DNA of 64,000 bases, from assembly GCA_963924565.1 (NCBI GenBank), contig OZ004612.1, forward strand, positions 14,756,001 to 14,820,000, given 5' to 3'. Made by a program: the position numbers and the translations under genes. Under the pieces are notes generated by a model. That model worked only from the letters and a program-made list of their open reading frames with translations. It searched no databases and had not been told where the DNA came from. This document shows, in pieces, positions 75-57,324 of the stretch. The first letter of the stretch is position 1; each line of letters opens with the position of its first letter. The stretch is from Ascidiella aspersa (Eukaryota).

Positions 75-3000
75 GAAAACGGCAAGCTCATTCTTCGTTT
101 TAACGTTGGTGGAGCGAGCGACGTGGTGCTGAGAGAAGGAATGTCCGTTTCGGACGGAAGCTACCACACTGTGCAGGTGCGCCGCCAGTGGCTGAACGCC
201 ACCATGCGTGTCGACAATTGGCCGGTCAGAAGCGTCGCCCCGCCCGGTAAGTTGGTCACGTGATGTTGATGATACAAATAGTTACGTTTGTGTAACGTCG
301 AGTATTTAAATAAACAGAAAAAGTAAAATCGACGGTTTGATTTTTTTGAAGATTTGAAATATACGTGTTTTTCTATTGTTGTAAAACTAATTTACTAGAA
401 AACAAATGGTTGTTGACGATTTTTAAAATCCAAGTTTTTGGAAATATTATAATTAACAACGTTAGTGTGCTACAATTTGGTAAAAAGTTATTATTGGTTT
501 CTATTTTCACCTTTGATTATACTGCCTAAAAAGAATATGAATAAAAACCTTGCATTCTGACCGATAGTTGTACAATTTGCATGTGCATTTTACTTAACGT
601 TCATCGTTTTCAATAGCAGCAGTAACATAACCATCATTTTAGCTGTTTATCCCGTTAACCTTAACCAACAACCATCACCGCTCTGTAAAACGATGTGTGG
701 CCTGTTTCTCTCGATGCACGTGAATACTAACGATTTCATCCTAACCGAATGGCATAGCAGGAACGCAGTAACATAAACGTCGTAACAACCGGTCTTGGTG
801 TGCTGGCGGGAAGGTGGCCAAAATAATTCCACAATAGAAAAGACTCACCGGACAAATTTGGTTAAATTGTTTACCGTTTAAAACACGAAATGTAGAGCGG
901 CACATGATCATTTTTTTTAATCATATCATGATCCTACGTTTGCAATACAAAAGCCCCGCCAATTATGTTAACGCTTTATTAACAACTTAAAACACCCGAA
1001 ATCCATTGTCAACCACAAGTCTCAGGTCCCCTGATAAACGCGAACAGTCATTAATAATGTTAAGTCTAATTAGTGAACAATTATATTTTCCAAATTAAAA
1101 AAATGACTCAGACGACATAAACTCTTGTGTAAATTCAATTTCATCTTGCTCCTATGGAGCTTGTCTCCAAAACCCAATAACAAATTTGCTCTCCCCACGG
1201 TTCCTTCTTTTATATACGTTTCTTGTTGTAGGGGATGCACGTTCCCGCTTTGCTCGCGTGATACCCTCGATAGCTTCCCCTGCCCGTCCCACCATTGATA
1301 AGTGGTTGCAACGCAAAGGTACTAACAAAACTCGGTGTCGTGTACATTCTTAATATGCTTCCTAACATGTTAAACACTATACTTTGTATATACGGTCGTG
1401 CTGTCTGTCTATGTTTCTGTATTTAAATGCTACTAACCCTGTTTATTTACATTAACGTATTACGCTTTGTGCATGAACCCTAGTTTTTGTTTGGTCAAGA
1501 CAACAATTGCTGCTTTGTACAGCGAATATTTCCTCCGTAAACCATCTGAATTGCGTGATTACACACGTCTGTGTTCGAAAGCAGCTCGTTTTCAACCTTG
1601 CCAAAACTACATTGCCTTTCTGAAAAAATAAACAAACATATCGTATTGTTAAGTACTGCAAAATTACGATTGAACCCATGCTTGATAATCCTAATATTCA
1701 AGTAAAATCCTGTGTATGATTAACCTAATCCATAAATTGTTGTAAATTCTCTAAAACAGTAAAACCAAGTCGGATTAAAGCTTTCATAACTCTTCACTAA
1801 AATTAATAAAAATCGGTGTGGACGTATTTTATGTACGATTTTCACAAGTTTATAAAGATTTATGAAAAGTATGATTTACCGATCACCTGAGTGCTTTTTC
1901 TGCAGTCTACTGATACAGTTAGAGAAACCCTGAATTAAACCGCTGTCGATTTAACAGTATTCGAACGTTGCGCACCGCCAAGAGACTAACTTATTCTTTG
2001 TGCAATTTAGAGCAACAAACCTCGGTTTTCAACTCACAGTCGACGATCCAGATCGGAGGCTTGCTCGGTGAAGACGTCTTGTCCACTCTTGACCAATCGC
2101 GGGACACCCGGACCGTGGCCATAGATCGGCCCTTCCGCGGTCAGATGACCGGCCTATTTTTTAATGACGTCAGGGTGTTTCAGCTCGCAGCGCAACGTAC
2201 GTGGTTTTCAAATGTTTTAGTTTTATTTTTACTTTGGAAGTAAAAACATCTTGATAGAATTCGTTTATGACAAATGTTTAAAACAAAGTTTTACCCTGGG
2301 AAAAGTTCATTGCGCTTCAACGATTGGTAAGAATAGTTAATCGTTCTCTGCCTATCGAAGAGGGGTTTTTAAACTATACTTTTAACGCGAATACTGGCAT
2401 TTTTCTCTATTAAACACCAAAGTTTGAAATTATATACACCAAGATTTGAATCAGGCATTCATGAGCCCCCAACAACTGGTCCTTAAGGGGTTCGTGGACT
2501 CCAGTTTAAGAACCGCTGGTATAGAGACACCGATCTTCTCGCAACCGTAGTCATATGTAGCCTGGTAACGTGTTTTATTTCGATTTGTTCAGGTGACGAT
2601 CAGGTTCGCTTTCTTGGCGACGTGACGCGGATCGGTGGGCCCGATTTGCTTCCCACCTCTCCAACGATAAACCAGCCGACTACCACGATGGCAACGCTGA
2701 CCATTTTTTCGACCACAAAGTCGTCTGAAAACGTCCCCAACGTACGAATGGTTTATTACACTATTCCAAGGCTTCTTAATTAGTCCACTGCGACCTTTTA
2801 AAAAGATTCAGGGTCATACTTGTTTTGCTAAGCGGCGATAAAGTTCATGTTCTTTGAATGTATAAATAGTAACTATCCACTTCGTTTCTTTCCAATCAAG
2901 CAAGTAGAAGTTTAGGAACATTTTAGCTTTTCGCACTTTATATGTTGATCTATAAATATGCATTTCACTGGAAATCTACCGGTGATGGACACGGGCCCAA

Positions 3001-6000
3001 ATATCCACCTCGGTGTAAATTACGTTTCTCGTTAAGGTGAAGGGATATAGATAATTTATATTTGTTAAGTTTGACCGCTCAAGATGCGCGCTGTTTGCAT
3101 AGTTTGCTCAGAACGCTAAATAAATGTCAATACTTTTTAACTTAAAGGGATCGAATTCCTACGACTGTGACGACGAAGACCTGTGCCCAAACTCATCAGG
3201 TAAGAATAAACGAACTAATTTCACTAGTTTTTATATCAGTGTGTTTGTCAGACAGCGGTGATGTTCACTCTCCAACTTATCACTGAATAATTTTTACCGT
3301 TTAAAAAGTTTGTTTTATATTGAAAGATTCATGTTCATAAAGTTTGAAATCAACATTTGGTTTAATTGTTTTGGCAACTTGTTAAAACGCCTTAAAGTAA
3401 AAAACCTTTTTATATTAGTTATTGTTATTCAACGCTCACAGAAAAACGACCAACGGGTGGCAAATTTTAACGACACTGTGAACATATTTTGTGAATATTT
3501 CGATTACGTATGCAGCTGGCTTGTGATCTTTTGGTGAAAAATGTCAACAATTCACTGACTGGCAAACACGCTGTTTACCTTAAGTAACGATAAACAATTT
3601 GATTGAGTAGCTGCATGTTTTCAGCTATGTCGCTTGGCTAACTGTGCAATACACTCTTTTTTCGTCCTCCCTCCGACACCCATTCCACAAATTACCAAAA
3701 AACCTTCACAAACCACCACCATCACAACCAATACCATAAACAACCATCGACATTTGAAACCGTATTTCGAAATACAGCCTACTCTTACAAAGGCGCCGAA
3801 ATCAATTTGTACGATTGTAACAATGGTTCGCCATACATGTCAGCAAACACTGTTAAGCGCATTATTCCGGTTTTGACTTTCGTCGCATTTTTACAAAGCA
3901 CATGATCTTCTTGCTTCCCCCACATGCGCCTTTTTTCAAGAATTATGCAAATAACCTGTTGCTTAACCTGTATGCATTTTAACCTTGGTCGAACACGTGT
4001 AATTGTTTTATAATGCTGTGGAAAAAACGAGTTTGGGTGAACGATCATGTATACTACATTGGCTGCTCACACAAAATTTAACAGAATAGAGTAAACATTT
4101 TACACGTTTAAAATAGCAATCACATTTAATAAAATACTAACACCTTTATTTTGATGTTACACGCTAACTGTCGTGGGGAAATACAATAATAACACGTAAG
4201 TACTTGTGTAGCATTAGATGTACTATGTTATTTTTTGTTTGTAATTTTGTTTCCAAAATTCAGTTGTACAGCCGTATAGATAATAATTAAACCATAGCAA
4301 CTGTTTACTAATTTTCCACATACGATCCAAACACTGGGAACGTTGCAGAAACGCAATTGTTTATGGGATGTTTTTCACGAACTAAATCACGTTTTTTTAT
4401 CTCGACAGGTTCCGGATCCGGATTTTTCGCCCAAATTGGCGAATCCCAAACACTAAGTGACGTCACACAAACCACATCTTTGCACGCGAGCGCCGACAAT
4501 TCCCAACAACGGGGTCAGGGGGGAGATCAGAACGGGGAAGGCCTCGAGTCGCTTCTCATGATTGCCGGCTTTTACACGACGCAATTGCCCACACTTTCGA
4601 CAACAAAGAGCAGTGTACGTGACGCGGATGCTGACGTCATCAATAAAAGTCCACGCGGCACAGAGAAGGTTACTTCCGCGCCGGTGGTCATAGAAGGAAA
4701 TGAGAGGCAGGAGAAACTATTCTACGACATGCCAAGCCTAAGTGAAATCCTCGACATTTTCACGAGTCCAGAAGTCTTAAATGATCCTAATGAAAAGAAA
4801 GATAACTCCTCCAAATCCGCCTCTTTCACTTCTGATATAAGCCTGGATGACGCTCTAAAGTTTTTCACTAATGAAGAAACTTACGATCCCGAAGTTGGAT
4901 CTGTATATGACCCCATCGCGCCAAGCCAATCATCTCGTAACGTTGTAGATTATCAATCCGGTGATGTTCGTTCACTGACAACCTTACCCGTGACCCGGTC
5001 CTCGAAAAATCTTAATCTCCTGAAATCGAATCCGCGTTTAGAAGAACATTCCGCTACCCCGACACTGATCAACCCCCCTGTTGCACCCCCTTTTGTGGTC
5101 ACCCCTCCTTACGTTGATACAACCAAACAGACCAGCGCAGTTGACTTCGCCCACTCACTTATCACACACAGTCCCACAAAAAGCATGTTCCACACACTAG
5201 GATTAAAAAGCACGGTTAGCAAAGAGGCAGAATCGAGCACTCCACCATCGCATGCGAGTAACCCACGTATTGTTTTGCCTTTTCCCACCCCTACCCACAC
5301 CTCACCAGGTGCACATACTGACCCCGCCCAGCCTACATCAACCTTTTCCACCACGACCGCTGTGGCAGATTGGCGCGACTTAGCGTCTGGCGTAACGCTC
5401 CGGGATTCGGCGCCAACTAGTTTAAACCGCCTGGAACCGTCTACCGACATTGGTTATTCTTCGCCGCCCCCGCCGATTCCACCCATGACGCCAACACGGT
5501 CAGCCAACACCCGCACTCCCACTTCCACTATAACTTCTGACACCAACACAACCTTTACCCGCTCTTTGCTAACCGACGTCATCGTGCGTGATGTCACAGA
5601 TCCGAAGAGCGATGTTACCGCGCCTGAAGGGAACTCGAACGCCGGTGGCGGCCAGCCGATGCCCAACCCCCATAACCCACGACGAGGCAACATGATCAAC
5701 GTCAGTAACACTTCCTCTACACCCAGTAACGTCACCGGTTACGCCGGCTCCAATGTCACCGGATCAGTGATGATCAGTGACGCTGGTAGTCTTACGACGG
5801 TGATGATAGCAGGAATAGCGGCCGCTGCTGCCTGCTGCGTGCTTCTTCTCTTTTACATGATTTATCGCTTCAAGTATCGTGACTCTGTGACGTACAACGT
5901 GGACGAGCGTGAGCGTCAATACGGCGCCAACCCCATCAAAGGCAAAAAGGTTGTCCAGACCAAAAATGGCTCCATGAAGCGCGACCCTAAAACGCAAAAA

Positions 6001-6030
6001 ACTGACAAAGACAAGGAATATTACGTATGA
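75..6030 (+). CDS. NRXN: Neurexin, 3' portion (LNS6 domain, Cys-loop, Ser/Thr-rich stalk, TM helix, PDZ-binding tail); gene begins upstream of the window
   Basis: Exons with GT-AG boundaries and consistent phases: 75-246 (ENGKLILRFNVGG...DGSYHTVQVRRQWLNATMRVDNWPVRSVAPP), optional 1232-1318, 2011-2196 (EQQTSVFNSQSTIQIGG...PFRGQMTGLFFNDVRVFQLAA), 2593-2741, 3148-3199 (SYDCDDEDLCPNSS), 4409-6030. The last exon ends MIYRFKYRDSVTYNVDE...KDKEYYV*, matching the neurexin 4.1-binding motif and the vertebrate neurexin C-terminal KDKEYYV. Confidence 0.95.
1232..1318 (+). CDS. NRXN: Neurexin splice-site-4 (SS4)-like cassette exon, 87 nt, phase 1-1
   Basis: Polypyrimidine tract and tgtag acceptor, gtacta donor, frame-preserving. 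Encodes GDARSRFARVIPSIASPARPTIDKWLQRK at the same LNS6 position as vertebrate SS4 ([30 protein letters not shown]). Confidence 0.85.
3778..3905 (+). CDS. Candidate alternative terminal neurexin exon encoding a GPI-anchor-like C-terminus (SS5-like)
   Basis: First AG after a 151-nt AG-free zone with a CTAAC branch point and polypyrimidine tract. Phase-1 join to the Cys-loop exon gives AYSYKGAEINLYDCNNGSPYMSANTVKRIIPVLTFVAFLQST*. AATAAA at 4128. Confidence 0.6.
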
Positions 6031-8097
6031 CACGACGTAGCTTCTTGGGTACCGCTAGCGGCAAGCTATAAGCGACAAATCAATCCGCCAGGTTAGGTGA
6101 ACGGGTCGCGCGATCGATTCCACTGTTTTGCCTTGCTTACTTACAGTAGTGTATGTTTCTGGCCGGCTGCTTTTCAACCCTGGTTGTTCATGTTGGTGCG
6201 CGCAAGTTTCTTGTCTTTTTTTTTCGCTGGTTTCTCGAACGTATAAATGCGTTGACGTGAATGGTTTTGAGTTCCTTTATTTCTCTCCTGCATTGTTTCG
6301 TTCGTATTTATTATTTGATTAGTTAACGGTGCTAAGCGACCGAACACTTCTATACGTTACGCGCACTTTTATGTTTGTTCTGTAGCGTTCGTTTTCGTTT
6401 CAAGCTCATGAAGTATGGGTATATTCGCAAGGCGAGCTATTTTCGCGAAAACGATAACTAATATAAGGACTTCATTAACAAAACAGTCAGGTTAAATACA
6501 CTTTGTACATAATTCAATTAAGTCAGTTCTGTGATTAAGTAAAGTTAATTTGTTAAGTAAAGAATAAAATTTATAATCATGTGTCCGCAAAGAATGTCAA
6601 GAATTTAACCACCAACGTCGCATTTGTATGATAAAAGTTTTAACTCGACTGTTGTTACTCCAATAGCATAGAATAAACATTACGGAGGCGTCTTACCTTA
6701 AGGGGATTGCAATAAAAAGCCAATTTTCTGTATTATTTGCGTTGTGATAGAGAACTATTACACACTGTACGTAATATGTATTTTTGAGGCGTTCTTCACT
6801 TGTTATTTTGATCACATTATTAATATTAAATTACTTTTGCTGTGTTTTCATTCTGGCGAAAATAAACATCCATTTTGGAGGAAATGGTGCCATGCATTGT
6901 TATATTTATTCTGCCCAGGAATTTGTAAGTTTTCCTTTAATTACAAGTTAATTTAAGTTAATTCTCCTTTTCCTTACAATATTACGACCAGTGGCAGTAT
7001 AATTTTTTTTTTCAAATTTGATTTACATTATTGTGTTTTTAAATTATTGTATATTTTAAACGATCATTAGACAAAACTAAAATCACGAAAGGTTGAATCA
7101 TAGTGGCGTCACAATTTACGAAAAACCGCAATAAATTAAAAAAATATCGACGCCACAGTTGTAAAACAAGAAATCATTTTGTCACTAAACACAAAATGAT
7201 GTGGATCCTTTGTTACGCTTTACACCAGAGAATCCCAAAGGGTGTAGTGGTTTCCCGTCCATTGTTAGATTCTGACGTAATAATTGTCTTTCTTATGTAA
7301 GGTTGTTGTTTGTTGTTACGTTTTACCATTTTATATGCGGCAAATTGTTTCTTTTTTTAAAGTCGTGGTGCAGAAAGTTGAATTTTTCCTGGTAATAGCA
7401 TAACCTTGAGAAATATATAATGTATATTAGGAAGTAATCTGGCGCTGGTTTACAATCCTACCACAACGAACATTATTTGGCTTAGGGTGCGGGTTAGCGT
7501 TTGGGTTTGAGTAGGGCGAGCAATATTAAATAATAACTAGACGGGGGTGCGGTTGTTGTATATTTTGTCAGGGGGTATATTTTCAGGGCTTAGTGTTTAT
7601 TTTCAATTTTTACTTTATTTCATTTATTTTATTTTTTTTTAATATTTTGTATTGTGTACTTTATATTATATATTTTGTTTTTTATTTTCCTTAACTTGTT
7701 TCTGCAAGCAAAAACAGATATGGGCCGAAAACTTCCCCACTTAACTTATGCCTTTGATGCGAAAGGGGTTCAAATAAGGCGTAGTATTTGGGGAATGATC
7801 GAAACATATATTTGATAAATAGAATTTACGTAGATAATGTCTATGGCCATTTTATTAAATTTTGACCAGCTTACGTGTTTGAAAAGCAAATATTATTATT
7901 CTCTTGAAGACTTAAAATGGTTTAACGCCTATGGTTTGCTATACTTTTGCAAACTTTTACTCGGTAATTTTTTACCATGGCTTGGGCCGAGCAATCACTG
8001 TTAAAACAGGCTTTAAATCTGTAGTTTTAAACAATATGAAAAACACTATTATGTTCTCAATACGCAAACTATTAAATCGAAAGTTTTGCTAGTTGTT

Positions 8098-14374: not shown

Positions 14375-15089
14375 CTTCTAATTGGCTTCAAAAACCGCTC
14401 ACGCGTGCCACTAGTTGCGGTATCCAGGTTTCATAGAGATCAGTGGATCAGTGACTATTCTACGTTTTTTGTGTTTTTTTTGGGTTGCGGGTTACCACAA
14501 ATACAATGTTTGCTAAGTGTTGCATGTCACTTTATTGTTATTGCAGCTGCAAATTATGCGCCTCTGTAGAAACTAATAATTACGACCGCACAATGATTAC
14601 GGCCACCCAAACAGACCTTGTTTGTAAATATTTTGTAAAATTTGAACTGGTAAAACATATCGGTTTTGGGTATTACCGAAAAAGCAAACCCTAGTAAATC
14701 TGCCTTTTTCTTTTCTAAAGCTAATGAAAGTCGTCTACTCACTCGACGAAGGAAACACGAGACTTCTATGTAGTCAGTCTGTCAGGGTTTTTGATGCCAC
14801 TGATAGTAACTCAATCATACGTTCTTTTGTTTTATAACAACTTGCAGTGGGAACTATAATGGATTTCGAACAAATGTCAACGAAGATATGTACATTGCTT
14901 TGTAATGAATGACGTTTTGACGTTATTTATCCAACTGCATTGAAGTTAATAGGTGCGCTTAAATGTGTTCTCTCTGTATATAACGATTAGCCATGGGTCA
15001 ATTATATTAAAATATCTCCATGGTAAAATCAGTTATTTTAAAATAAGGAAGTATTGAGTTAGGTGCTAAGTTGACTTTTTGTGGCGATA

Positions 15090-18000
15090 ATGGCTGAAAT
15101 GACTGAGACTAATCTTACTTCGGGTGAAGCTATGCTGGGTGAGGAATCAACTGTCCAGCTGCTAAAGAATGGAAAAGGTGTTGAAGTTGCAGTATTGGAC
15201 AAAAGTAACAAATACAAGCAAATTGAAGCAGAAAGAAATAGTGAAACAAGAACTAAGCTGTACAAAAGGCGATTCCTAGTTCTTGGCATTTTTTGCCTCT
15301 ACTCCATGTCAAGTGCTTTTCAGTGGATTGAATATGCAATCATTACTGACATAGTGTTAAAATATTACAATAACAGCTCAGTACTAGCTGTAGCATGGAC
15401 TTCAATGATTTACATGCTTACTTATATTCCACTAATGTTTGTTGCAACATGGATGCTGGATAACTGGGGTATGCGGCGGAGTTTGCTATTCGGTGCAACC
15501 TTGAATGCAATTGGGGCTCTCATCAAAATACCCAGTGTCAACCAAGATTTTTTTTGGCTCACATTTACAGGTATCTATTGGAAACTCGTTATCAACAAAA
15601 TTACACATTTTAGCAATTGTCAGTTGTTTTACCCTTTCACACTTGTGTAAAATTAATCTAGAACATATACTAAATAGAGTTAAGCCCTATTTCCTTTTAA
15701 ATCTAAGATACTCTCAATTATTTAGCCAGTTAATACCAACATGTAATAATAATTTCTTTACATATTATACCAATGTGCTTATTAGTTATTATATTATATA
15801 TTTTTAGGTCAATCAGTTGCAGCTTGTGCTCAATCCTTTATCCTTGAAATTCCCCCAAAGATTGCTTCTTTGTGGTTCAGTGCTTCTGAAGTTTCAACTG
15901 CTACTTCTGTTGGAGTGTTTGGTAATCAGGTAACAAACTGTTGGCCAAAATTGTGATATAAGTTCAGAATGAAACAATTTTGATGCACTTATGTTAAATA
16001 ATTAATTTAGAAATAAACTGGTAGCACAGAATCAGTGGAATTATAATATATTACAAGTGAAAAAAAAAACTTTATGCAGTTAGTTGGAGCTCTTCGCTGC
16101 ATAGGCATAGCAATATAATAAGGGTGTTTTTAGCAAGTTATACCAATTTAATTATTTTGCATGGTTAGAATTGTGCAAATGTATGCAGGATTACTTAAAG
16201 CAATTACATGCCTTACTTTTTGTTTCACCATTTTGCATTAAGTTGTGTATGTTTTAATTGTGTAAAATTGGTGCATTGTATTCTTAAGCTACACATTTAT
16301 GTTATATATGATTAAAGCACATAATAGCAATTTTGTATAAACAACTGTGCCATTAGGGAATGTGGTGTTAAGTCTCTCTTGTGAATAGTATTGCCTACTT
16401 TATAAACCAAATATTTTTCTAGATGTCAACAGATAACAATGTATAATTAATCCATTTTTTAAATAAACAACAGGCTTAATTTGCATGTTAATTCTAGTTA
16501 TAAATACCATTAAACAAACTCTATATATTGAATTATTTAGACATGGATTTCATTTTTTAACATGAAGTTCAAGCCAAATTGGCCCAATTTGTTGTATTTA
16601 TAGTAACTTAAGTAAGAAATTTCACTATTTACAGATTGGACAGAATTAACTGCAGAATACTACCAACCCAATTTTTTTTTTAAATAAATTCACACCAATT
16701 AATTAGATTTGCTTAAGTTTTCAGACCGCTTCTAAATGCACCAGCAATAAAAAACTGCCCACAATCTAAACAAGGTTGTAATTTACAACATTTCCTCAAA
16801 TACTAGATGTTTCCATTAACACAGTGACCAAAAGTGCCGTATTAGTATTACCAAGTAAGATCTATCTTAACGATTAAAAAATTGGAGCAAATGGGTATAA
16901 AAAAAGGCACTAAAAAAACAGGGTTTTATATTTTTTTTAAAGAATTCTATATCTCCATAAAAAAGCCTTAATATACAATTACATATACATAAATTAAAGT
17001 AGCGAAATATCCATGTGCTTTTATTTTTGTTCAATAAATTCTTTAATTCCTATGTACAATAATAATGTTTTGTGATTGCATTTAATCAAACGCTTAAAAA
17101 GAACCTGTAAGTGTTAATGTAAACCGTTAGCTTCCCGTGACCTTAAATAGTTTAATATCCATCAAATGTTTTACTATTTTACTGGCATTGTGAATTTAAG
17201 AGACTTTTAACTTGTTGGCTTAGAGGCGCACCTATATCTGCATGCATTAAACAGAGACCTGGTTAATGCCGTTGGTGTTATTTTGAAGACCCTGTGTGGC
17301 CAGGCCAGTTTCAGGAAATGTTAGCTATCAAAAAATATTCACCTTGCCACCACACTAATAACCTCTATGCAGAAGGTCAGTGAAGGTTCTGTCCTTCAGT
17401 AAAGCTTAATTGCCACACTGGTCAATTTAGTTATACCACAGACAGTCTGCCAAGATAAAACGAATTCTTTACCTCATGGCTTAGTCATATGTTAGCATTA
17501 ACCACCTAAGGCACATCTGAGATAAGTAGACTACTTGTTCAATTATACTACGTTTGTCAAAAAAGTCCACTGAAACATGAAGATAATTTGATTAAAATGA
17601 TCTGTTGCACTTACAAAAACGCAGTTACAAAAACTGTTAACTTAATATTAAAAAAAAAACATATCCTCTAGAGAAAATCCAATTTTTTAACAGTTAGGTA
17701 ATTCTGCAGAATAAATTTAAACACACAAAATAAGAACAAGACTGGTATAATCCTAGCTATTTAAACATACTTAACAGACTATTTATTTTTACATGCAAAG
17801 GTTTGTATAGTTGTAAAGAAAATTTGTGTTATGTAAAATCAACCAAAAAAATACTAATGTTACACACTTATTTTTCCTTATTTTAAAAGCAAAAACATCT
17901 AATGTTGTTCGACAAACATGTCTCTACCAGTCACCTTTAAATTATGTTTTTATTCTTTACATGTTTGCTGGCAGTTGGGTGTCGCTCTCGGTTTCCTTAT

Positions 18001-55461: not shown

Positions 55462-56523
55462 GAATAAATATAACAATTATAGTTGACCCACCCATGAAAC
55501 GCCTATGAACATATTCACCCAAATAGTGTTAGCATAACCATCCTCAATGAAAATATGGCAGGAATCATCGCCCAATCAGAAAATGGAATTTTCCACAGCT
55601 TTACCTTGTTTCAGAAATGGTTTCCCAACCTGTTTAATTTACTTGTTTGCATGGTTAATAGGCTCTGCCCATTTAATAGTAAATATAAGCAAAAGTGGAT
55701 AAAACGTAAACAATCTATTATAACATGGCCTTAATTAAACAGTCACAAAACTTTAAATAATTTGTATTTTCAATAGAACTTGTTGAGAGCGACATCTGTA
55801 TTTGTTATTTAACAGGTTTGTTTTGTGTGTGCATTCAAAAAGTTTGTTTAAACATGTTCTGTCATGTTTTCTATCCTGTGCATCTTGCTCGTTAACTGAC
55901 CTGTTAATCCCTAAGGCATTCGTTTTACCTAGACGTTAGTCGTATCCAAATTCTACTGCAAACCGGCCATCGATTTGCATGCCATACTGGCTAGATGTGT
56001 TTTTACTGTGCTGTAACCTGTTTTAATTGAAGTGAGCTATGCTAAGATTTTTAAATTTACAATATATTTATAAGTGACCTGCGACAGTATGCCCTTTGAA
56101 ATGCAATGGCAGTTTGTTTTAGTCTCGATTTAGTTGAGTTCAGATAACATGCTGGTCATGTCTCCTTGTTGAAATATACAACCTGCACCCCTTTGAAAAT
56201 GAATATGCACCTGTTTTTTTTCATTATGTTATAATGGCGGGGTGCACTTGTGACCTTAGTTGCACGTTTGGTCGCCCAAATTTTTTCGGCTGTGCACCTG
56301 TGAGATCCCGTTGAGATTTGCCATACTTTCTAGACGGGTTTAATGGGTGCACCAAAGGTCAAAAGTGTACCCTGCCATGTTGCTAACCGTGGATTCCGAG
56401 TGCACGGCTGAAAAACAGGGGTGAAATTTTCCAAATTATTGCATACCTATAAGCAAGCTAGGTAAATATTCATTTTACACAAAATAATACATATGTTGTT
56501 AAAAGAAAAGTTGTAATTATATA

Positions 56524-57324
56524 ATGGAGTTTGACACTGACATATTTTGCCAAGAAAGGGATATTATTCTCAAGATACGAGAACTCAACACTCACATTGT
56601 CTGTGGACTATGCGCTGGATATTTCATCGATGCAACAACAATTTCTGAATGTTCACATACATTTTGCAAGAGTTGTATTGTTAAGCACCTACAAACAAAA
56701 AAATCCTGCCCGGAATGTGGGCAAAAAATTCACGAAACTCAACCACTCCTTAATCTTCGAAGCGATCGTGTTATGCAGGATGTAGTTTATAAACTGGTGC
56801 CAAATCTTTTTCAAAATGAACAGCAAAGAGAATCTGATTTCTGTCGAGTTCGAGGCACAGACTTTGCTTTGAGCCGTAGTCATTTGCTAAATATTGGAAC
56901 TCCACTGAAATATACCCAGCAGAAAGTGCTGAAAGATTTTGTTGATCTCATGATACCTACCTTGGATGCTCAGAAAGTACCGAATCTTCATGAGGCACAT
57001 CTATATTCACATGATGAAAAAATCACATTTAGATTGTGTGCAAAAAAAGAAAAACAAGATCAAATAAACAATCGAGATGATTACAAACTTAAAACTGGCA
57101 AAGAAAAGTTTGTTCGTTGTCCAATTCGGGCTACAGTATATCATTTACTTTGCGTTTTAAAAAAAATTCTGCATAATGATAACAAGCAGCATATAATCAC
57201 TCTTACCTGTTGTGGTGTTTTGCTTTTTGAATCATGTACCATAAAACATGTACTTCTTTTGAATTGGTATAGTTCAGATAAGTATTCTGAAGATATTCCT
57301 TTAATCGAATATGAAATTAGCTAG
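56524..57324 (+). CDS. PCGF1: Polycomb group RING finger protein 1 (PRC1.1 subunit), intronless, 266 aa
   Basis: C3HC4 RING KIRELNTHIVCGLCAGYFIDATTISECSHTFCKSCIVKHL...CPEC...KIHETQPLLNLRSDRVMQDVVYKLVP, closely matching PCGF1 (IHETQPLLNLKLDRVMQDIVYKLVP). C-terminal RAWUL-like segment KFVRCPIRATVYHL. Confidence 0.92.
   Translation: MEFDTDIFCQERDIILKIRELNTHIVCGLCAGYFIDATTISECSHTFCKSCIVKHLQTKKSCPECGQKIHETQPLLNLRSDRVMQDVVYKLVPNLFQNEQQRESDFCRVRGTDFALSRSHLLNIGTPLKYTQQKVLKDFVDLMIPTLDAQKVPNLHEAHLYSHDEKITFRLCAKKEKQDQINNRDDYKLKTGKEKFVRCPIRATVYHLLCVLKKILHNDNKQHIITLTCCGVLLFESCTIKHVLLLNWYSSDKYSEDIPLIEYEIS

What the first reader, a model, noticed from the sequence alone, without database searches (positions are those of the whole stretch)
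3612..4133. Hidden alternative last exon predicting a GPI-anchored neurexin, behind a distant branch point and NOVA-type YCAY cluster
Seen: TGCATG at 3612, a CTAAC branch point at 3638-3642 and a polypyrimidine tract. No AG dinucleotide occurs from 3625 to 3775 (151 nt), and this zone contains nine YCAY motifs (3680-3747). The first AG (3776-3777) opens, in the correct phase 1, AYSYKGAEINLYDC-NNGS-PYMSANTVKR-IIPVLTFVAFLQST-stop: small-residue omega candidates, a polar spacer and a hydrophobic tail. AATAAA follows at 4128. Known: long AG-exclusion zones mark regulated exons, YCAY clusters are NOVA sites, and mammalian neurexin-3 SS5 produces a GPI-anchored isoform at this same post-Cys-loop position. 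Inference: an ancestral or convergent GPI/TM switch in a non-vertebrate neurexin that the ORF track does not show.
Basis: partly seen in the sequence, partly recalled or inferred. Interest (0 to 1): 0.88.

Follow-up and report, generated by a model that had tools for sequence, protein, structure and literature searches.

The report
Conserved GPI-type alternative exon in sea-squirt neurexin
Inside the last intron of a sea squirt's single neurexin gene lies a short exon, conserved in four sea-squirt lineages, that would swap the membrane-spanning tail for a lipid (GPI) anchor signal, the switch so far described only for mammalian neurexin-3; no RNA using it was seen in this species.

Summary
The letters are as reported: TGCATG 3612, CTAAC 3638-3642, no AG 3625-3775, nine YCAY, AG 3776, a phase-1 ORF of 42 codons with stop at 3905-3907, AATAAA 4128. 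The gene is an ascidian neurexin: Cys-loop exon 3148-3199, last intron 3200-4408, last exon 4409-6030 (stalk, TM, ...EYYV).

On its own the ORF is weak evidence: 7 of 35 intron AGs open phase-1 ORFs of 37 codons or more. The one RNA run shows only 3199>4409 (16 reads) and no 3199>3778 joint, but only 6% of it was read.

Comparison turns the verdict:
- A Ciona intestinalis RefSeq isoform (X13) and a Clavelina model end after the Cys-loop, in the same phase, with equivalent tails.
- A fourth ascidian contig (L002) has the same ORF in the same intron.
- All four tails have N-x-small 24-28 residues from the end, a spacer of 8-12 and a 10-14 residue hydrophobic tail.
- The branch-point/pyrimidine block (3637-3661) is the best match between the two otherwise unalignable introns, and both have a top-ranked AG-free zone.

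The exon is probably real and GPI-directing. Unresolved: NOVA control, and whether the exon is terminal or, as in mouse Nrxn3 exon 24, a stop-bearing cassette (GTAAGT at 4196, matched in L002). Earlier notes of this scan cover other parts of this gene, not this exon.

The parts
3148..3199 (+). Constitutive Cys-loop micro-exon (C-x5-C, ends ...CPNSS plus one base G, phase 1); the donor used by both the TM and the proposed GPI form
   Evidence: Translation. RNA joints 2741>3148 (11 reads) and 3199>4409 (16 reads) in run X4, and one spliced contig in X3. Homologous to the Cys-loop of Phallusia, Clavelina and Ciona neurexins.
3200..4408 (+). Last intron of the canonical (transmembrane) mRNA; it holds the alternative exon
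   Evidence: GT..AG joint 3199>4409. Single copy in the genome.
3637..3661 (+). Conserved branch-point block: GCTAACTGT (branch A at 3641), six variable bases, then CACTCTTTTT, the start of the pyrimidine tract that runs to about 3674
   Evidence: 21/25 identical to L002:7597-7621. It is the best blastn hit between the two introns (E 0.009) and lies in the same place relative to the exon. GCTAACTGT occurs only twice in the window and once in L002.
3625..3775 (+). AG-exclusion zone between the distant branch point and the acceptor (135 nt from A3641 to AG 3776)
   Evidence: No AG. Third longest in the window. The matching zone in L002 (7543-7670, 128 nt) is the longest on that locus's + strand.
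3676..3750 (+). C/A-rich, G-poor tract with nine YCAY; a candidate binding platform (NOVA, hnRNP L or PTB-type), function untested
   Evidence: Densest YCAY cluster of the window. Modestly above its own composition. L002 has a shorter C/A-rich stretch with 4 YCAY.
3776..3777 (+). Proposed 3' splice site (CAG|)
   Evidence: First AG after the AG-free zone. L002 has CAG| at 7669-7672 in the same layout. No RNA joint seen here.
3778..3907 (+). Coding part of the alternative exon: 42 residues (starts AYSY, motif DCNNGS, hydrophobic IIPVLTFVAFL, ends QST) plus stop 3905-3907; a predicted GPI-attachment signal with omega at N15 or N16
   Evidence: ORF. Aligned with the tails of P0080 (residues 1427-1464), P0059 (1393-1426) and L002:7673-7785. 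Among 1482 control ORFs, only this ORF, a shorter form of it from AG 3791, and L002's combine the features. Ranks 5 of 975 against the Ciona tail.
3908..4195 (+). Non-coding remainder of the alternative exon. It ends either at a poly(A) site after AATAAA 4128-4133, or at the donor-like CAC|GTAAGT at 4195/4196 (cassette model, exon 418 nt)
   Evidence: AATAAA. The only GTAAGT in the intron is at 4196. L002 has its only one at 8060, giving a 387-nt exon, and has no AATAAA nearby. A few sense reads lie at about 3948-4098 in X4, and contig 3809-3978 in X3, not above intron background.
4409..6030 (+). Canonical last exon: about 480-residue Ser/Thr/Pro stalk, TM helix, cytoplasmic tail ending KDKEYYV, then stop; replaced when the alternative exon is used
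   Evidence: Translation. Pfam Syndecan-type TM/tail match at 24.9 bits, just under the 25.2-bit cut-off. 72.5% identity of the last 120 residues to the Phallusia neurexin. 9 synonymous of 18 SNPs against 24% expected.

Best explanation
The last intron of this ascidian's single neurexin gene contains a genuine, evolutionarily conserved alternative exon that starts at 3778.

When the Cys-loop exon (ending at 3199, phase 1) is spliced to it instead of to 4409, the long stalk, the transmembrane helix and the PDZ-binding cytoplasmic tail are replaced by 42 residues that end in a stop. Those residues have the build of a GPI-attachment signal: an omega-type Asn followed by small residues (CNNG), a polar spacer of about 11 residues, and a hydrophobic stretch of 11-14 residues that is too short to span a membrane. 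The product would be a lipid-anchored neurexin that keeps the whole ectodomain and the Cys-loop but cannot signal through its tail. This is the same logic as mouse Nrxn3 exon 24 (AS5).

The exon is recognised through a distant branch point (A3641 in a conserved GCTAACTGT...CACTCTTTTT block), 135 nt upstream of the acceptor. An AG-free, C/A-rich zone lies between them and probably carries the regulatory sites.

Shown: the ORF, its conservation in four ascidian lineages, conservation of the branch-point block and of the AG-free zone, and the canonical splice.

Inferred: use of the exon in this species, GPI anchoring itself, and the identity of the regulators. The exon may be a stop-bearing cassette (donor at 4195/4196) rather than a terminal exon.
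For: 1. Position and phase. The Ciona RefSeq isoform X13 (P0080) and the Clavelina model CAK8680222.1 (P0059) end directly after the Cys-loop with alternative tails of 38 and 34 residues. Their other isoforms continue into stalk, TM and EYYV. P0080 has six LamG domains and EGF but no TM/Syndecan match.
2. A fourth lineage. In L002, the intron between the Cys-loop exon and the last exon holds a phase-1 ORF of 38 residues at 7673-7785.
3. Shared build. N-x-small lies 27, 27, 28 and 24 residues from the end, the spacer is 8-12 residues, and the best hydrophobic 12-mers have Kyte-Doolittle means of 2.2-2.3. Three of the four share the motif C-N-[S/T/N]-[A/G]. The tails start with [A/G]-Y in three species and GR in Clavelina.
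4. Controls.
- Among 1482 AG-initiated phase-1 ORFs of the window and L002, only the candidate ORF (also from its nested AG at 3791) and the L002 ORF combine two or more of these features; both have all three.
- The candidate ranks 5 of 975 in global score against the Ciona tail.
- An AYxY start occurs at 4 of 6194 AGs.
- The GPI-like rule written, before any relative was seen, is passed by the Ciona and Clavelina tails.
5. The branch-point block is the best match between the two introns, and the AG-free zone is top-ranked in both.
6. The region is single copy and the ORF is intact.
7. Precedent: mouse Nrxn3 exon 24 carries a stop and a GPI signal, and GPI anchoring was shown there (PMC9275415).
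Against: 1. No RNA support in this species. In run X4 there are 16 reads for 3199>4409, no listed 3199>3778 or 4195>4409 joint (listing needs 3 reads), and depth of 0.04 over 3740-3873. Only about 6% of the run was read and the tissue is unknown, so this bounds usage at roughly under a quarter of the canonical form in that sample.
2. Both SNPs inside the coding part are non-synonymous (D13G, M21I), and SNP density equals that of the intron. Two SNPs is too few to decide.
3. Generic alignment of the tails is not significant (local score P 0.2 against Ciona, 0.95 against Clavelina). The homology rests on anchored motifs and architecture, and part of the motif was written after L002 had been seen.
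4. I could not check whether the Ciona and Clavelina models rest on transcripts. The nine RefSeq isoforms of Clavelina listed in the cluster lack the tail.
5. No GPI predictor could be run. L002's tail fails my own crude rule.
Confidence: 0.65

Rival explanations
1. Real, conserved alternative exon, but its role is at the RNA level or it gives a soluble protein. A stop-bearing 'poison' cassette would lower neurexin output through nonsense-mediated decay or translational silencing, or would release a secreted ectodomain. The hydrophobic end would not be used as a GPI signal.
For: A GTAAGT 275-290 nt after the stop in both species fits a cassette whose stop lies far upstream of the last junction. 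Mouse exon 24 mRNAs were first thought to be decay targets or to give secreted forms, and the neighbouring exon 25a is translationally silenced (PMC9275415). A donor read-through model in Ciona (P0070) hints at soluble forms too.
Against: A poison exon needs only a stop. Here four lineages keep the distance from N-x-small to the end (24-28 residues), the spacer and a hydrophobic tail of 10-14 residues, which points to selection on the peptide. In mouse the equivalent peptide was shown to be a working GPI signal.
Confidence: 0.15
2. The exon works in other ascidians, but in this species it is a decaying or unused relic.
For: No junction reads and about zero depth over the acceptor in X4. Both SNPs are non-synonymous, and polymorphism is as high as in the intron.
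Against: The ORF, the acceptor, the branch-point block and the 151-nt AG-free zone are all intact. RNA sampling was thin (6% of one run, unknown tissue). The mouse counterpart is restricted to particular cell types (PMC9275415).
Confidence: 0.1
3. Chance: an ordinary intronic ORF next to a low-complexity C/A-rich tract. The resemblance to the other species' tails comes from T-rich introns yielding hydrophobic ORF ends, which gene predictors then pick up.
For: 7 of 35 AGs in this intron open long in-phase ORFs, several with hydrophobic ends. AG-free runs of 140 nt or more occur six times on this strand. Local alignment scores between the tails are not significant.
Against: The same intron, the same phase and the same architecture recur in four lineages. 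The CN-small motif and [A/G]Y start are found in no other of 1482 control ORFs. The 25-nt branch-point block is conserved in otherwise unalignable introns. The AG-free zone is the longest in L002.
Confidence: 0.07

Closest known systems
Mouse/human neurexin-3 AS5 (SS5) exon 24, GPI-anchored NRXN3 proteoform (Hauser et al. 2022, PMC9275415; Ushkaryov and Sudhof 1993, as cited there)
   Same: An alternative exon between the last extracellular exon and the TM-encoding exon. It carries an in-frame stop and encodes an omega site plus a hydrophobic stretch. The result is a neurexin with a full ectodomain but no TM or cytoplasmic tail. If the GTAAGT at 4196 is used, the exon would also be a cassette followed by the TM exon acting as 3'UTR.
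   Different: It occurs in the single neurexin gene of a non-vertebrate chordate, whereas a review calls the feature 'unique to Nrxn3' (PMC9812575). Sequence homology to vertebrate exon 24 was not tested. GPI anchoring and expression are not shown here. That the mammalian site follows the Cys-loop exon is my recollection and was not verified in the papers I read.
Ciona intestinalis 'neurexin-3 isoform X13' (XP_026689399.1, P0080) and Clavelina lepadiformis CAK8680222.1 (P0059)
   Same: Database gene models of ascidian neurexin that end right after the Cys-loop with the orthologous tail: same phase, an [A/G]-x-x-Y start, N-x-small, and a P-hydrophobic tail.
   Different: These are automatic models. 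I found no paper that notes them or calls them GPI-anchored. Their transcript support could not be checked. The window's species has no such model visible to me.
Exons with distant branch points and AG-exclusion zones (Gooding et al. 2006, from memory; for example tropomyosin and actinin regulated exons)
   Same: A consensus branch point followed by a pyrimidine tract lies far (135 nt here, 70 nt in L002) upstream of the first AG. This layout is typical of regulated exons.
   Different: The branch point has not been mapped. The regulator is unknown. The zone's length differs twofold between species because of a C/A-rich expansion.
NOVA-dependent exons with intronic YCAY clusters (Ciona Agrin Z exons, PMC12445529)
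   Same: A dense YCAY cluster lies next to a neuronal alternative exon in an ascidian, and Ciona Nova is shown to act through such clusters.
   Different: Here the cluster lies upstream, between the branch point and the acceptor. By the vertebrate Nova RNA map (my knowledge), that position predicts repression rather than inclusion. It is only weakly conserved in L002 and may partly be a by-product of a G-poor low-complexity tract.

Membership tests
Neurexin (gene context) | LNS/EGF ectodomain, Cys-loop, TM and cytoplasmic tail ending in the PDZ-binding EYYV | tested here: met
   The last exon ends KDKEYYV after a TM helix. There is a Laminin_G match (E about 1e-3, 20.1 bits, under the 22.9-bit cut-off) in exon ORF 1923-2240, and a Syndecan-type tail just under cut-off. 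The 173-residue query is 60% identical to the Phallusia mammillata neurexin, and the last 120 residues are 72.5% identical.
GPI-attachment signal (C-terminal propeptide) | Omega site with small residues at omega and omega+2 | tested here: met
   N-N-G (or N-G-S) at residues 15-18 of the tail. The same column holds N-S-A in Ciona, N-T-A in L002 and N-S-S in Clavelina.
GPI-attachment signal (C-terminal propeptide) | Polar spacer of about 6-12 residues, then a C-terminal hydrophobic stretch too short for a TM helix, with the protein ending soon after | tested here: met
   Spacer of 11 residues, hydrophobic IIPVLTFVAFL, then QST and the stop. There are 27 residues after omega. The relatives have spacers of 8-12 and 24-28 residues after omega. 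This is a hand-made rule only.
GPI-attachment signal (C-terminal propeptide) | Positive call by a trained predictor (NetGPI, PredGPI, big-PI), and an N-terminal signal peptide on the same protein | not testable with these tools
   No GPI predictor is available. The 5' end of the gene lies outside the window.
GPI-attachment signal (C-terminal propeptide) | Biochemical proof (PI-PLC release, ethanolamine labelling) | not testable with these tools
   Experiment needed. It was done for mouse exon 24 (PMC9275415).
Nrxn3 AS5/exon 24-type TM-to-GPI switch | Alternative exon between the last ectodomain exon and the TM exon, carrying an in-frame stop | tested here: met
   Exon 3778 onward lies in intron 3200-4408, is in phase with 3199, and has its stop at 3905-3907.
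Nrxn3 AS5/exon 24-type TM-to-GPI switch | The exon is actually included in mRNA | tested here: not met
   No joint 3199>3778 in X4 (16 canonical reads; 6% of the run read; listing threshold 3 reads). X3 has only an unspliced contig at 3809-3978. Included in gene models of Ciona and Clavelina, whose evidence I could not inspect.
Nrxn3 AS5/exon 24-type TM-to-GPI switch | Cassette exon followed by the TM exon as 3'UTR | tested here: inconclusive
   A single GTAAGT at 4196 (L002: 8060) gives exons of 418 and 387 nt. AATAAA at 4128 is an alternative end in this species only. No 4195>4409 joint was seen.
Nrxn3 AS5/exon 24-type TM-to-GPI switch | Sequence homology to vertebrate exon 24 | not tested
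Distant-branch-point / AG-exclusion-zone exon | Consensus branch point plus pyrimidine tract more than 50 nt upstream, with no AG in between | tested here: met
   CTAAC at 3638-3642, pyrimidine tract to about 3674, no AG until 3776. The block is conserved, and the zone recurs in L002 with the branch point 70 nt from the AG.
Distant-branch-point / AG-exclusion-zone exon | Mapped lariat at that adenosine | not testable with these tools
   Needs lariat RT-PCR or branch-point sequencing.
NOVA-regulated exon | YCAY cluster near the exon, above background and conserved | tested here: inconclusive
   Nine YCAY in 70 nt, the window's maximum, P 0.002-0.03 against the tract's own composition. L002 has 4 in 32 nt, one of 14 such starts, in about eight places, on its + strand.
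NOVA-regulated exon | Splicing changes when Nova is removed or the YCAY are mutated | not testable with these tools
   Minigene or knock-down needed. The method exists for Ciona (PMC12445529).

The most novel reading that the evidence does not exclude
The TM-to-GPI switch at neurexin splice site 5 is not a neurexin-3 speciality. It would be an ancestral feature of the single neurexin gene of the common ancestor of tunicates and vertebrates, homologous to vertebrate exon 24, kept for over 500 million years together with its unusual distant-branch-point architecture, and lost from Nrxn1 and Nrxn2 after the vertebrate genome duplications. That would make the function of lipid-anchored neurexin testable in the roughly 200-neuron Ciona larva.
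Probability: 0.3. Interest if true: 0.8.

Novelty: new member of a known kind. Interest (0 to 1): 0.66.

Why it matters
GPI-anchored neurexin is a recent discovery in mouse. It is required for dendritic inhibition, and a review treats it as unique to neurexin-3. Finding the same switch, at the same exon junction, in the single neurexin gene of several ascidian lineages would mean one of two things. Either the lipid-anchored form is old and basic to chordate synapses, or it evolved twice at the same place. Either way it offers a simple, genetically tractable animal with a mapped nervous system in which to ask what a tail-less neurexin does. It also provides a conserved example of a distant branch point with an AG-exclusion zone, on which splicing control can be dissected with existing Ciona minigene methods. 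For annotation, it shows that the gene has a protein-changing exon that ORF tracks and most gene models miss.

Tried and rejected
- The search for homologous proteins on the TM/tail part of the last-exon ORF found nothing significant. On the 87-aa ORF around the candidate it found no candidates. Both blanks are uninformative because of the length filter.
Conservation of their intronic signals and their exon ends is therefore unknown.
- Rfam scan of 3150-4450 found nothing.
- The repeat or transposon explanation is rejected: the region is single copy in its own genome at both DNA and protein level.
- Generic local alignments of the tails are not significant. I rely instead on anchored, architecture-based tests.
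- The match of the Cys-loop exon to 3804-3821 in frame (N-x-Y-D-C-D/N-D/N) gives protein P about 0.004, but the DNA score is not significant. I keep it only as a hint of an old exon duplication.
- L002 against L003 (same species, 8 intron SNPs) shows no SNP in the 520 nt from the branch point to the donor, against 1.5 expected. This is not significant.
- TGCATG as a conserved RBFOX site is rejected as unsupported: it has no positional counterpart in L002.
- A second GPI-looking ORF in L002 (AG 9888) lies in the pyrimidine tract of the last exon's acceptor and has no counterpart in the window. I treat it as chance.
- No search was made with a joined (spliced) protein. Exons were searched apart, by reference. 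The split codon was translated only inside scripts.
Full report
**Observation**

The window's first 6 kb hold the 3' end of a neurexin gene on the + strand.
- RNA reads of run X4 join 2741>3148 (11 reads) and 3199>4409 (16 reads, GT..AG). A contig of X3 carries both joints.
- Exon 3148-3199 encodes the Cys-loop (…YDCDDEDLCPNSS plus one base, phase 1).
- Exon 4409-6030 encodes a stalk of about 480 residues rich in Ser, Thr and Pro, a TM helix and a tail ending KDKEYYV.
- Pfam gives near-cut-off support: a Syndecan-type TM/tail match just under cut-off and a weak Laminin_G match, also under cut-off, in an upstream exon.
- The nearest database protein is the Phallusia mammillata neurexin. It is 60% identical over the stalk end, TM and tail, and 72.5% over the last 120 residues.
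- The organism is therefore an ascidian, in agreement with earlier scan notes. The TM/tail is single copy in its 308.6-Mb genome.

All letters of the finding are correct: TGCATG at 3612, CTAAC at 3638-3642, no AG from 3625 to 3775, nine YCAY, AG at 3776, 42 in-phase codons with the stop at 3905-3907, and AATAAA at 4128.

**What the window alone can say**

Not much.
- The AG-free run is only the third longest on this strand, and it sits in a G-poor C/A-rich tract.
- The YCAY cluster is the window's densest. It is about twofold above what the tract's own composition gives (P 0.002 by mononucleotide shuffle, 0.03 by first-order Markov).
- Of the 35 AGs in the intron, 7 open in-phase ORFs of 37 codons or more, some with hydrophobic ends.
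- A crude GPI-like rule that I fitted to the candidate is passed by about 0.9% of ORF ends in the window.
- The region is not a repeat and matches no Rfam family.

**RNA in this species**

Only one RNA run with raw reads was offered, and about 6% of it was read.
- It shows the canonical joint. No 3199>3778 joint is listed; listing needs 3 reads.
- Depth is 0.04 over 3740-3873, against 7-12 on the last exon.
- Four reads at about 3948-4098 come from one or two fragments, no more than elsewhere in the intron.
- X3, which behaves as RNA because it has a spliced contig, has unspliced islands at 3266-3496 and 3809-3978. Their ends coincide with heterozygous SNPs, so they say nothing about exon borders.
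- The exon is therefore unsupported by RNA here. Usage is bounded only at roughly under a quarter of the canonical form, in a sample of unknown tissue.
- Polymorphism does not help. Both SNPs in the 127-nt coding part are non-synonymous (D13G, M21I), and density equals that of the intron. The true last exon shows 9 synonymous of 18, against 24% expected.

**Comparison with other ascidians**

This changes the picture. The representative search with the stalk end, TM and tail led to the Phallusia, Clavelina and Ciona neurexins. Three observations follow.
- Within the Clavelina cluster, one model (CAK8680222.1, P0059) ends directly after the Cys-loop with 34 other residues. Nine RefSeq isoforms continue into stalk and TM.
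- Within the Ciona cluster, RefSeq isoform X13 (P0080) ends after the Cys-loop with 38 other residues. It has six LamG domains and EGF but no TM match.
- A JGI metagenome contig (L002, with a near-identical second copy L003) carries the 3' end of a fourth ascidian neurexin: the stalk-start exon with TTTMATLT, the Cys-loop exon ending at 7197, and the last exon from 10017. In its last intron, AG 7671 opens an in-phase ORF of 38 residues.

Aligned, the four tails share:
- an [A/G]-x-x-Y start (AYSY, AYKY, GY-Y, GRKY);
- an invariant Asn followed by small residues (NNG, NSA, NTA, NSS), preceded by Cys in three of them;
- 27, 27, 28 and 24 residues from that Asn to the end;
- a spacer of 8-12 residues;
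- a Pro or Ser that opens a hydrophobic stretch of 10-14 residues (Kyte-Doolittle 12-mer means of 2.2-2.3);
- a few polar residues at the end in three of them (Clavelina's ends in the hydrophobic stretch).

This is the textbook build of a GPI-attachment signal. The hydrophobic part is too short for a TM helix.

**Controls**
- Generic local alignment is not significant (P 0.2 and 0.95), as expected for short, fast-evolving signal peptides.
- Anchored tests are significant. The candidate ranks 5 of 975 control ORFs in global score against the Ciona tail, and an AYxY start occurs at 4 of 6194 AGs.
- Among 1482 AG-initiated phase-1 ORFs of the window and L002, on both strands, the C-N-[S/T/N]-[A/G] motif occurs only in the candidate ORF (also counted from its nested AG at 3791) and the L002 ORF. 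These are also the only ones to combine the features.
- Caveat: the motif's wording was fixed after L002 had been seen.
- The rule written, before any relative was known, is passed by the Ciona and Clavelina tails but not by L002's, whose hydrophobic block ends five residues from the end.

**Splicing signals**

The two introns (1.2 and 2.8 kb) are otherwise unalignable.
- Their best blastn match (E 0.009) is window 3637-3661 against L002 7597-7621. It reads GCTAACTGT, six variable bases, then CACTCTTTTT, with 21 of 25 identical.
- In L002 the stretch from there to the acceptor (7543-7670, 128 nt) is the longest AG-free run on the + strand of the 21.7-kb locus.
- The distant branch point and the AG-exclusion zone are thus conserved features, not accidents of a C/A-rich tract.
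- The tract itself is half as long in L002 and holds only 4 YCAY, which is not unusual there. NOVA binding stays a hypothesis. Ciona Nova does act through YCAY clusters (PMC12445529). By the vertebrate RNA map (my knowledge), a cluster between branch point and acceptor would repress the exon.
- TGCATG has no positional counterpart in L002.

**End of the exon**

Instead, each intron has exactly one GTAAGT besides the Cys-loop donor's own GTAAG: at 4196 in the window and at 8060 in L002. These lie 290 and 275 nt after the stop and give exons of 418 and 387 nt.

That fits a stop-bearing cassette exon followed by the TM exon as 3'UTR, which is how mouse Nrxn3 exon 24 works (PMC9275415). No 4195>4409 joint was seen, so terminal versus cassette stays open.

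**Comparison with what is known**
- In mouse, exon 24 of Nrxn3 (AS5) carries a stop and conserved residues that form a GPI signal. GPI anchoring was shown by ethanolamine labelling and by transfer to a reporter (PMC9275415).
- A review calls this 'unique to Nrxn3' (PMC9812575).
- I found no paper on a GPI-type neurexin in tunicates, although the Ciona model sits in RefSeq under the automatic name 'neurexin-3 isoform X13'.
- The present exon works like exon 24. Membership in the sense of homology was not tested, and neither expression nor anchoring is shown.
- That the mammalian site directly follows the Cys-loop exon is my recollection; the papers I read did not state it.

**Verdict**

The core of the interpretation (a hidden GPI-type alternative exon behind a distant branch point) is supported by conservation in four ascidian lineages. 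Three things remain open: the 'last exon' detail, NOVA control, and actual use in this species. Confidence that this is a real GPI-directing alternative exon is about 0.65.

- No search was made with a spliced, joined protein.

Noticed in passing
window 4276-4409: RNA depth of 5.6 just upstream of the canonical acceptor at 4408/4409, with zero depth in 4142-4275. This could be unspliced ends, an upstream alternative acceptor (AG 4278 or 4297; mouse Nrxn3 has acceptors 25a, b and c), or an internal start. An ATG at 4363 is in frame with the last exon, which would be gamma-neurexin-like.
   Followed up: no
window 4163-4171: A second copy of GCTAACTGT, the core of the conserved branch-point block, lies 33 nt before the GTAAGT at 4196. 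The 9-mer occurs nowhere else in the 64-kb window.
   Followed up: partly
window 3200-3262; P0070: AATAAA at 3205 lies directly after the Cys-loop donor. Reading through the donor gives 20 residues (GKNK...) and a stop. A Ciona model (F6WKV2, P0070) ends the same way (GKHIF...). This is a possible third, soluble form.
   Followed up: no
window 3804-3821 vs 3154-3171: The alternative exon and the Cys-loop exon share N-x-Y-D-C-(D/N)-(D/N) in frame. This is the best DNA match of the Cys-loop exon anywhere in the intron. Protein P is about 0.004, but the DNA score is not significant. It is possibly an old exon duplication.
   Followed up: partly
P0062 (Clavelina isoform X9); window 4409-5800: Clavelina RefSeq isoform X9 joins the Cys-loop exon to an acceptor deep inside the last exon and skips almost the whole stalk. 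This supports the scan's separate note on nested acceptors and tunable stalk length.
   Followed up: no
window 4976 and 5503: In-frame length polymorphisms in the stalk: 27 nt missing in X3 and 6 nt inserted in X2, X3 and X4. SNP density is about 1.2-1.6% across the region, so the species is highly polymorphic.
   Followed up: no
window 3266-3496: An unspliced RNA-like contig island in X3 and a few X4 reads lie in the first part of the last intron. The upstream intron 2742-3147 has none in either run.
   Followed up: no
window 15075-15647 and 56503-57321: Other genes in the window, judged by eye from the ORF list only: the first exon of a multi-pass membrane transporter-like protein, and a RING-finger protein with a Polycomb-group (PCGF/BMI1-like) look.
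   Followed up: no
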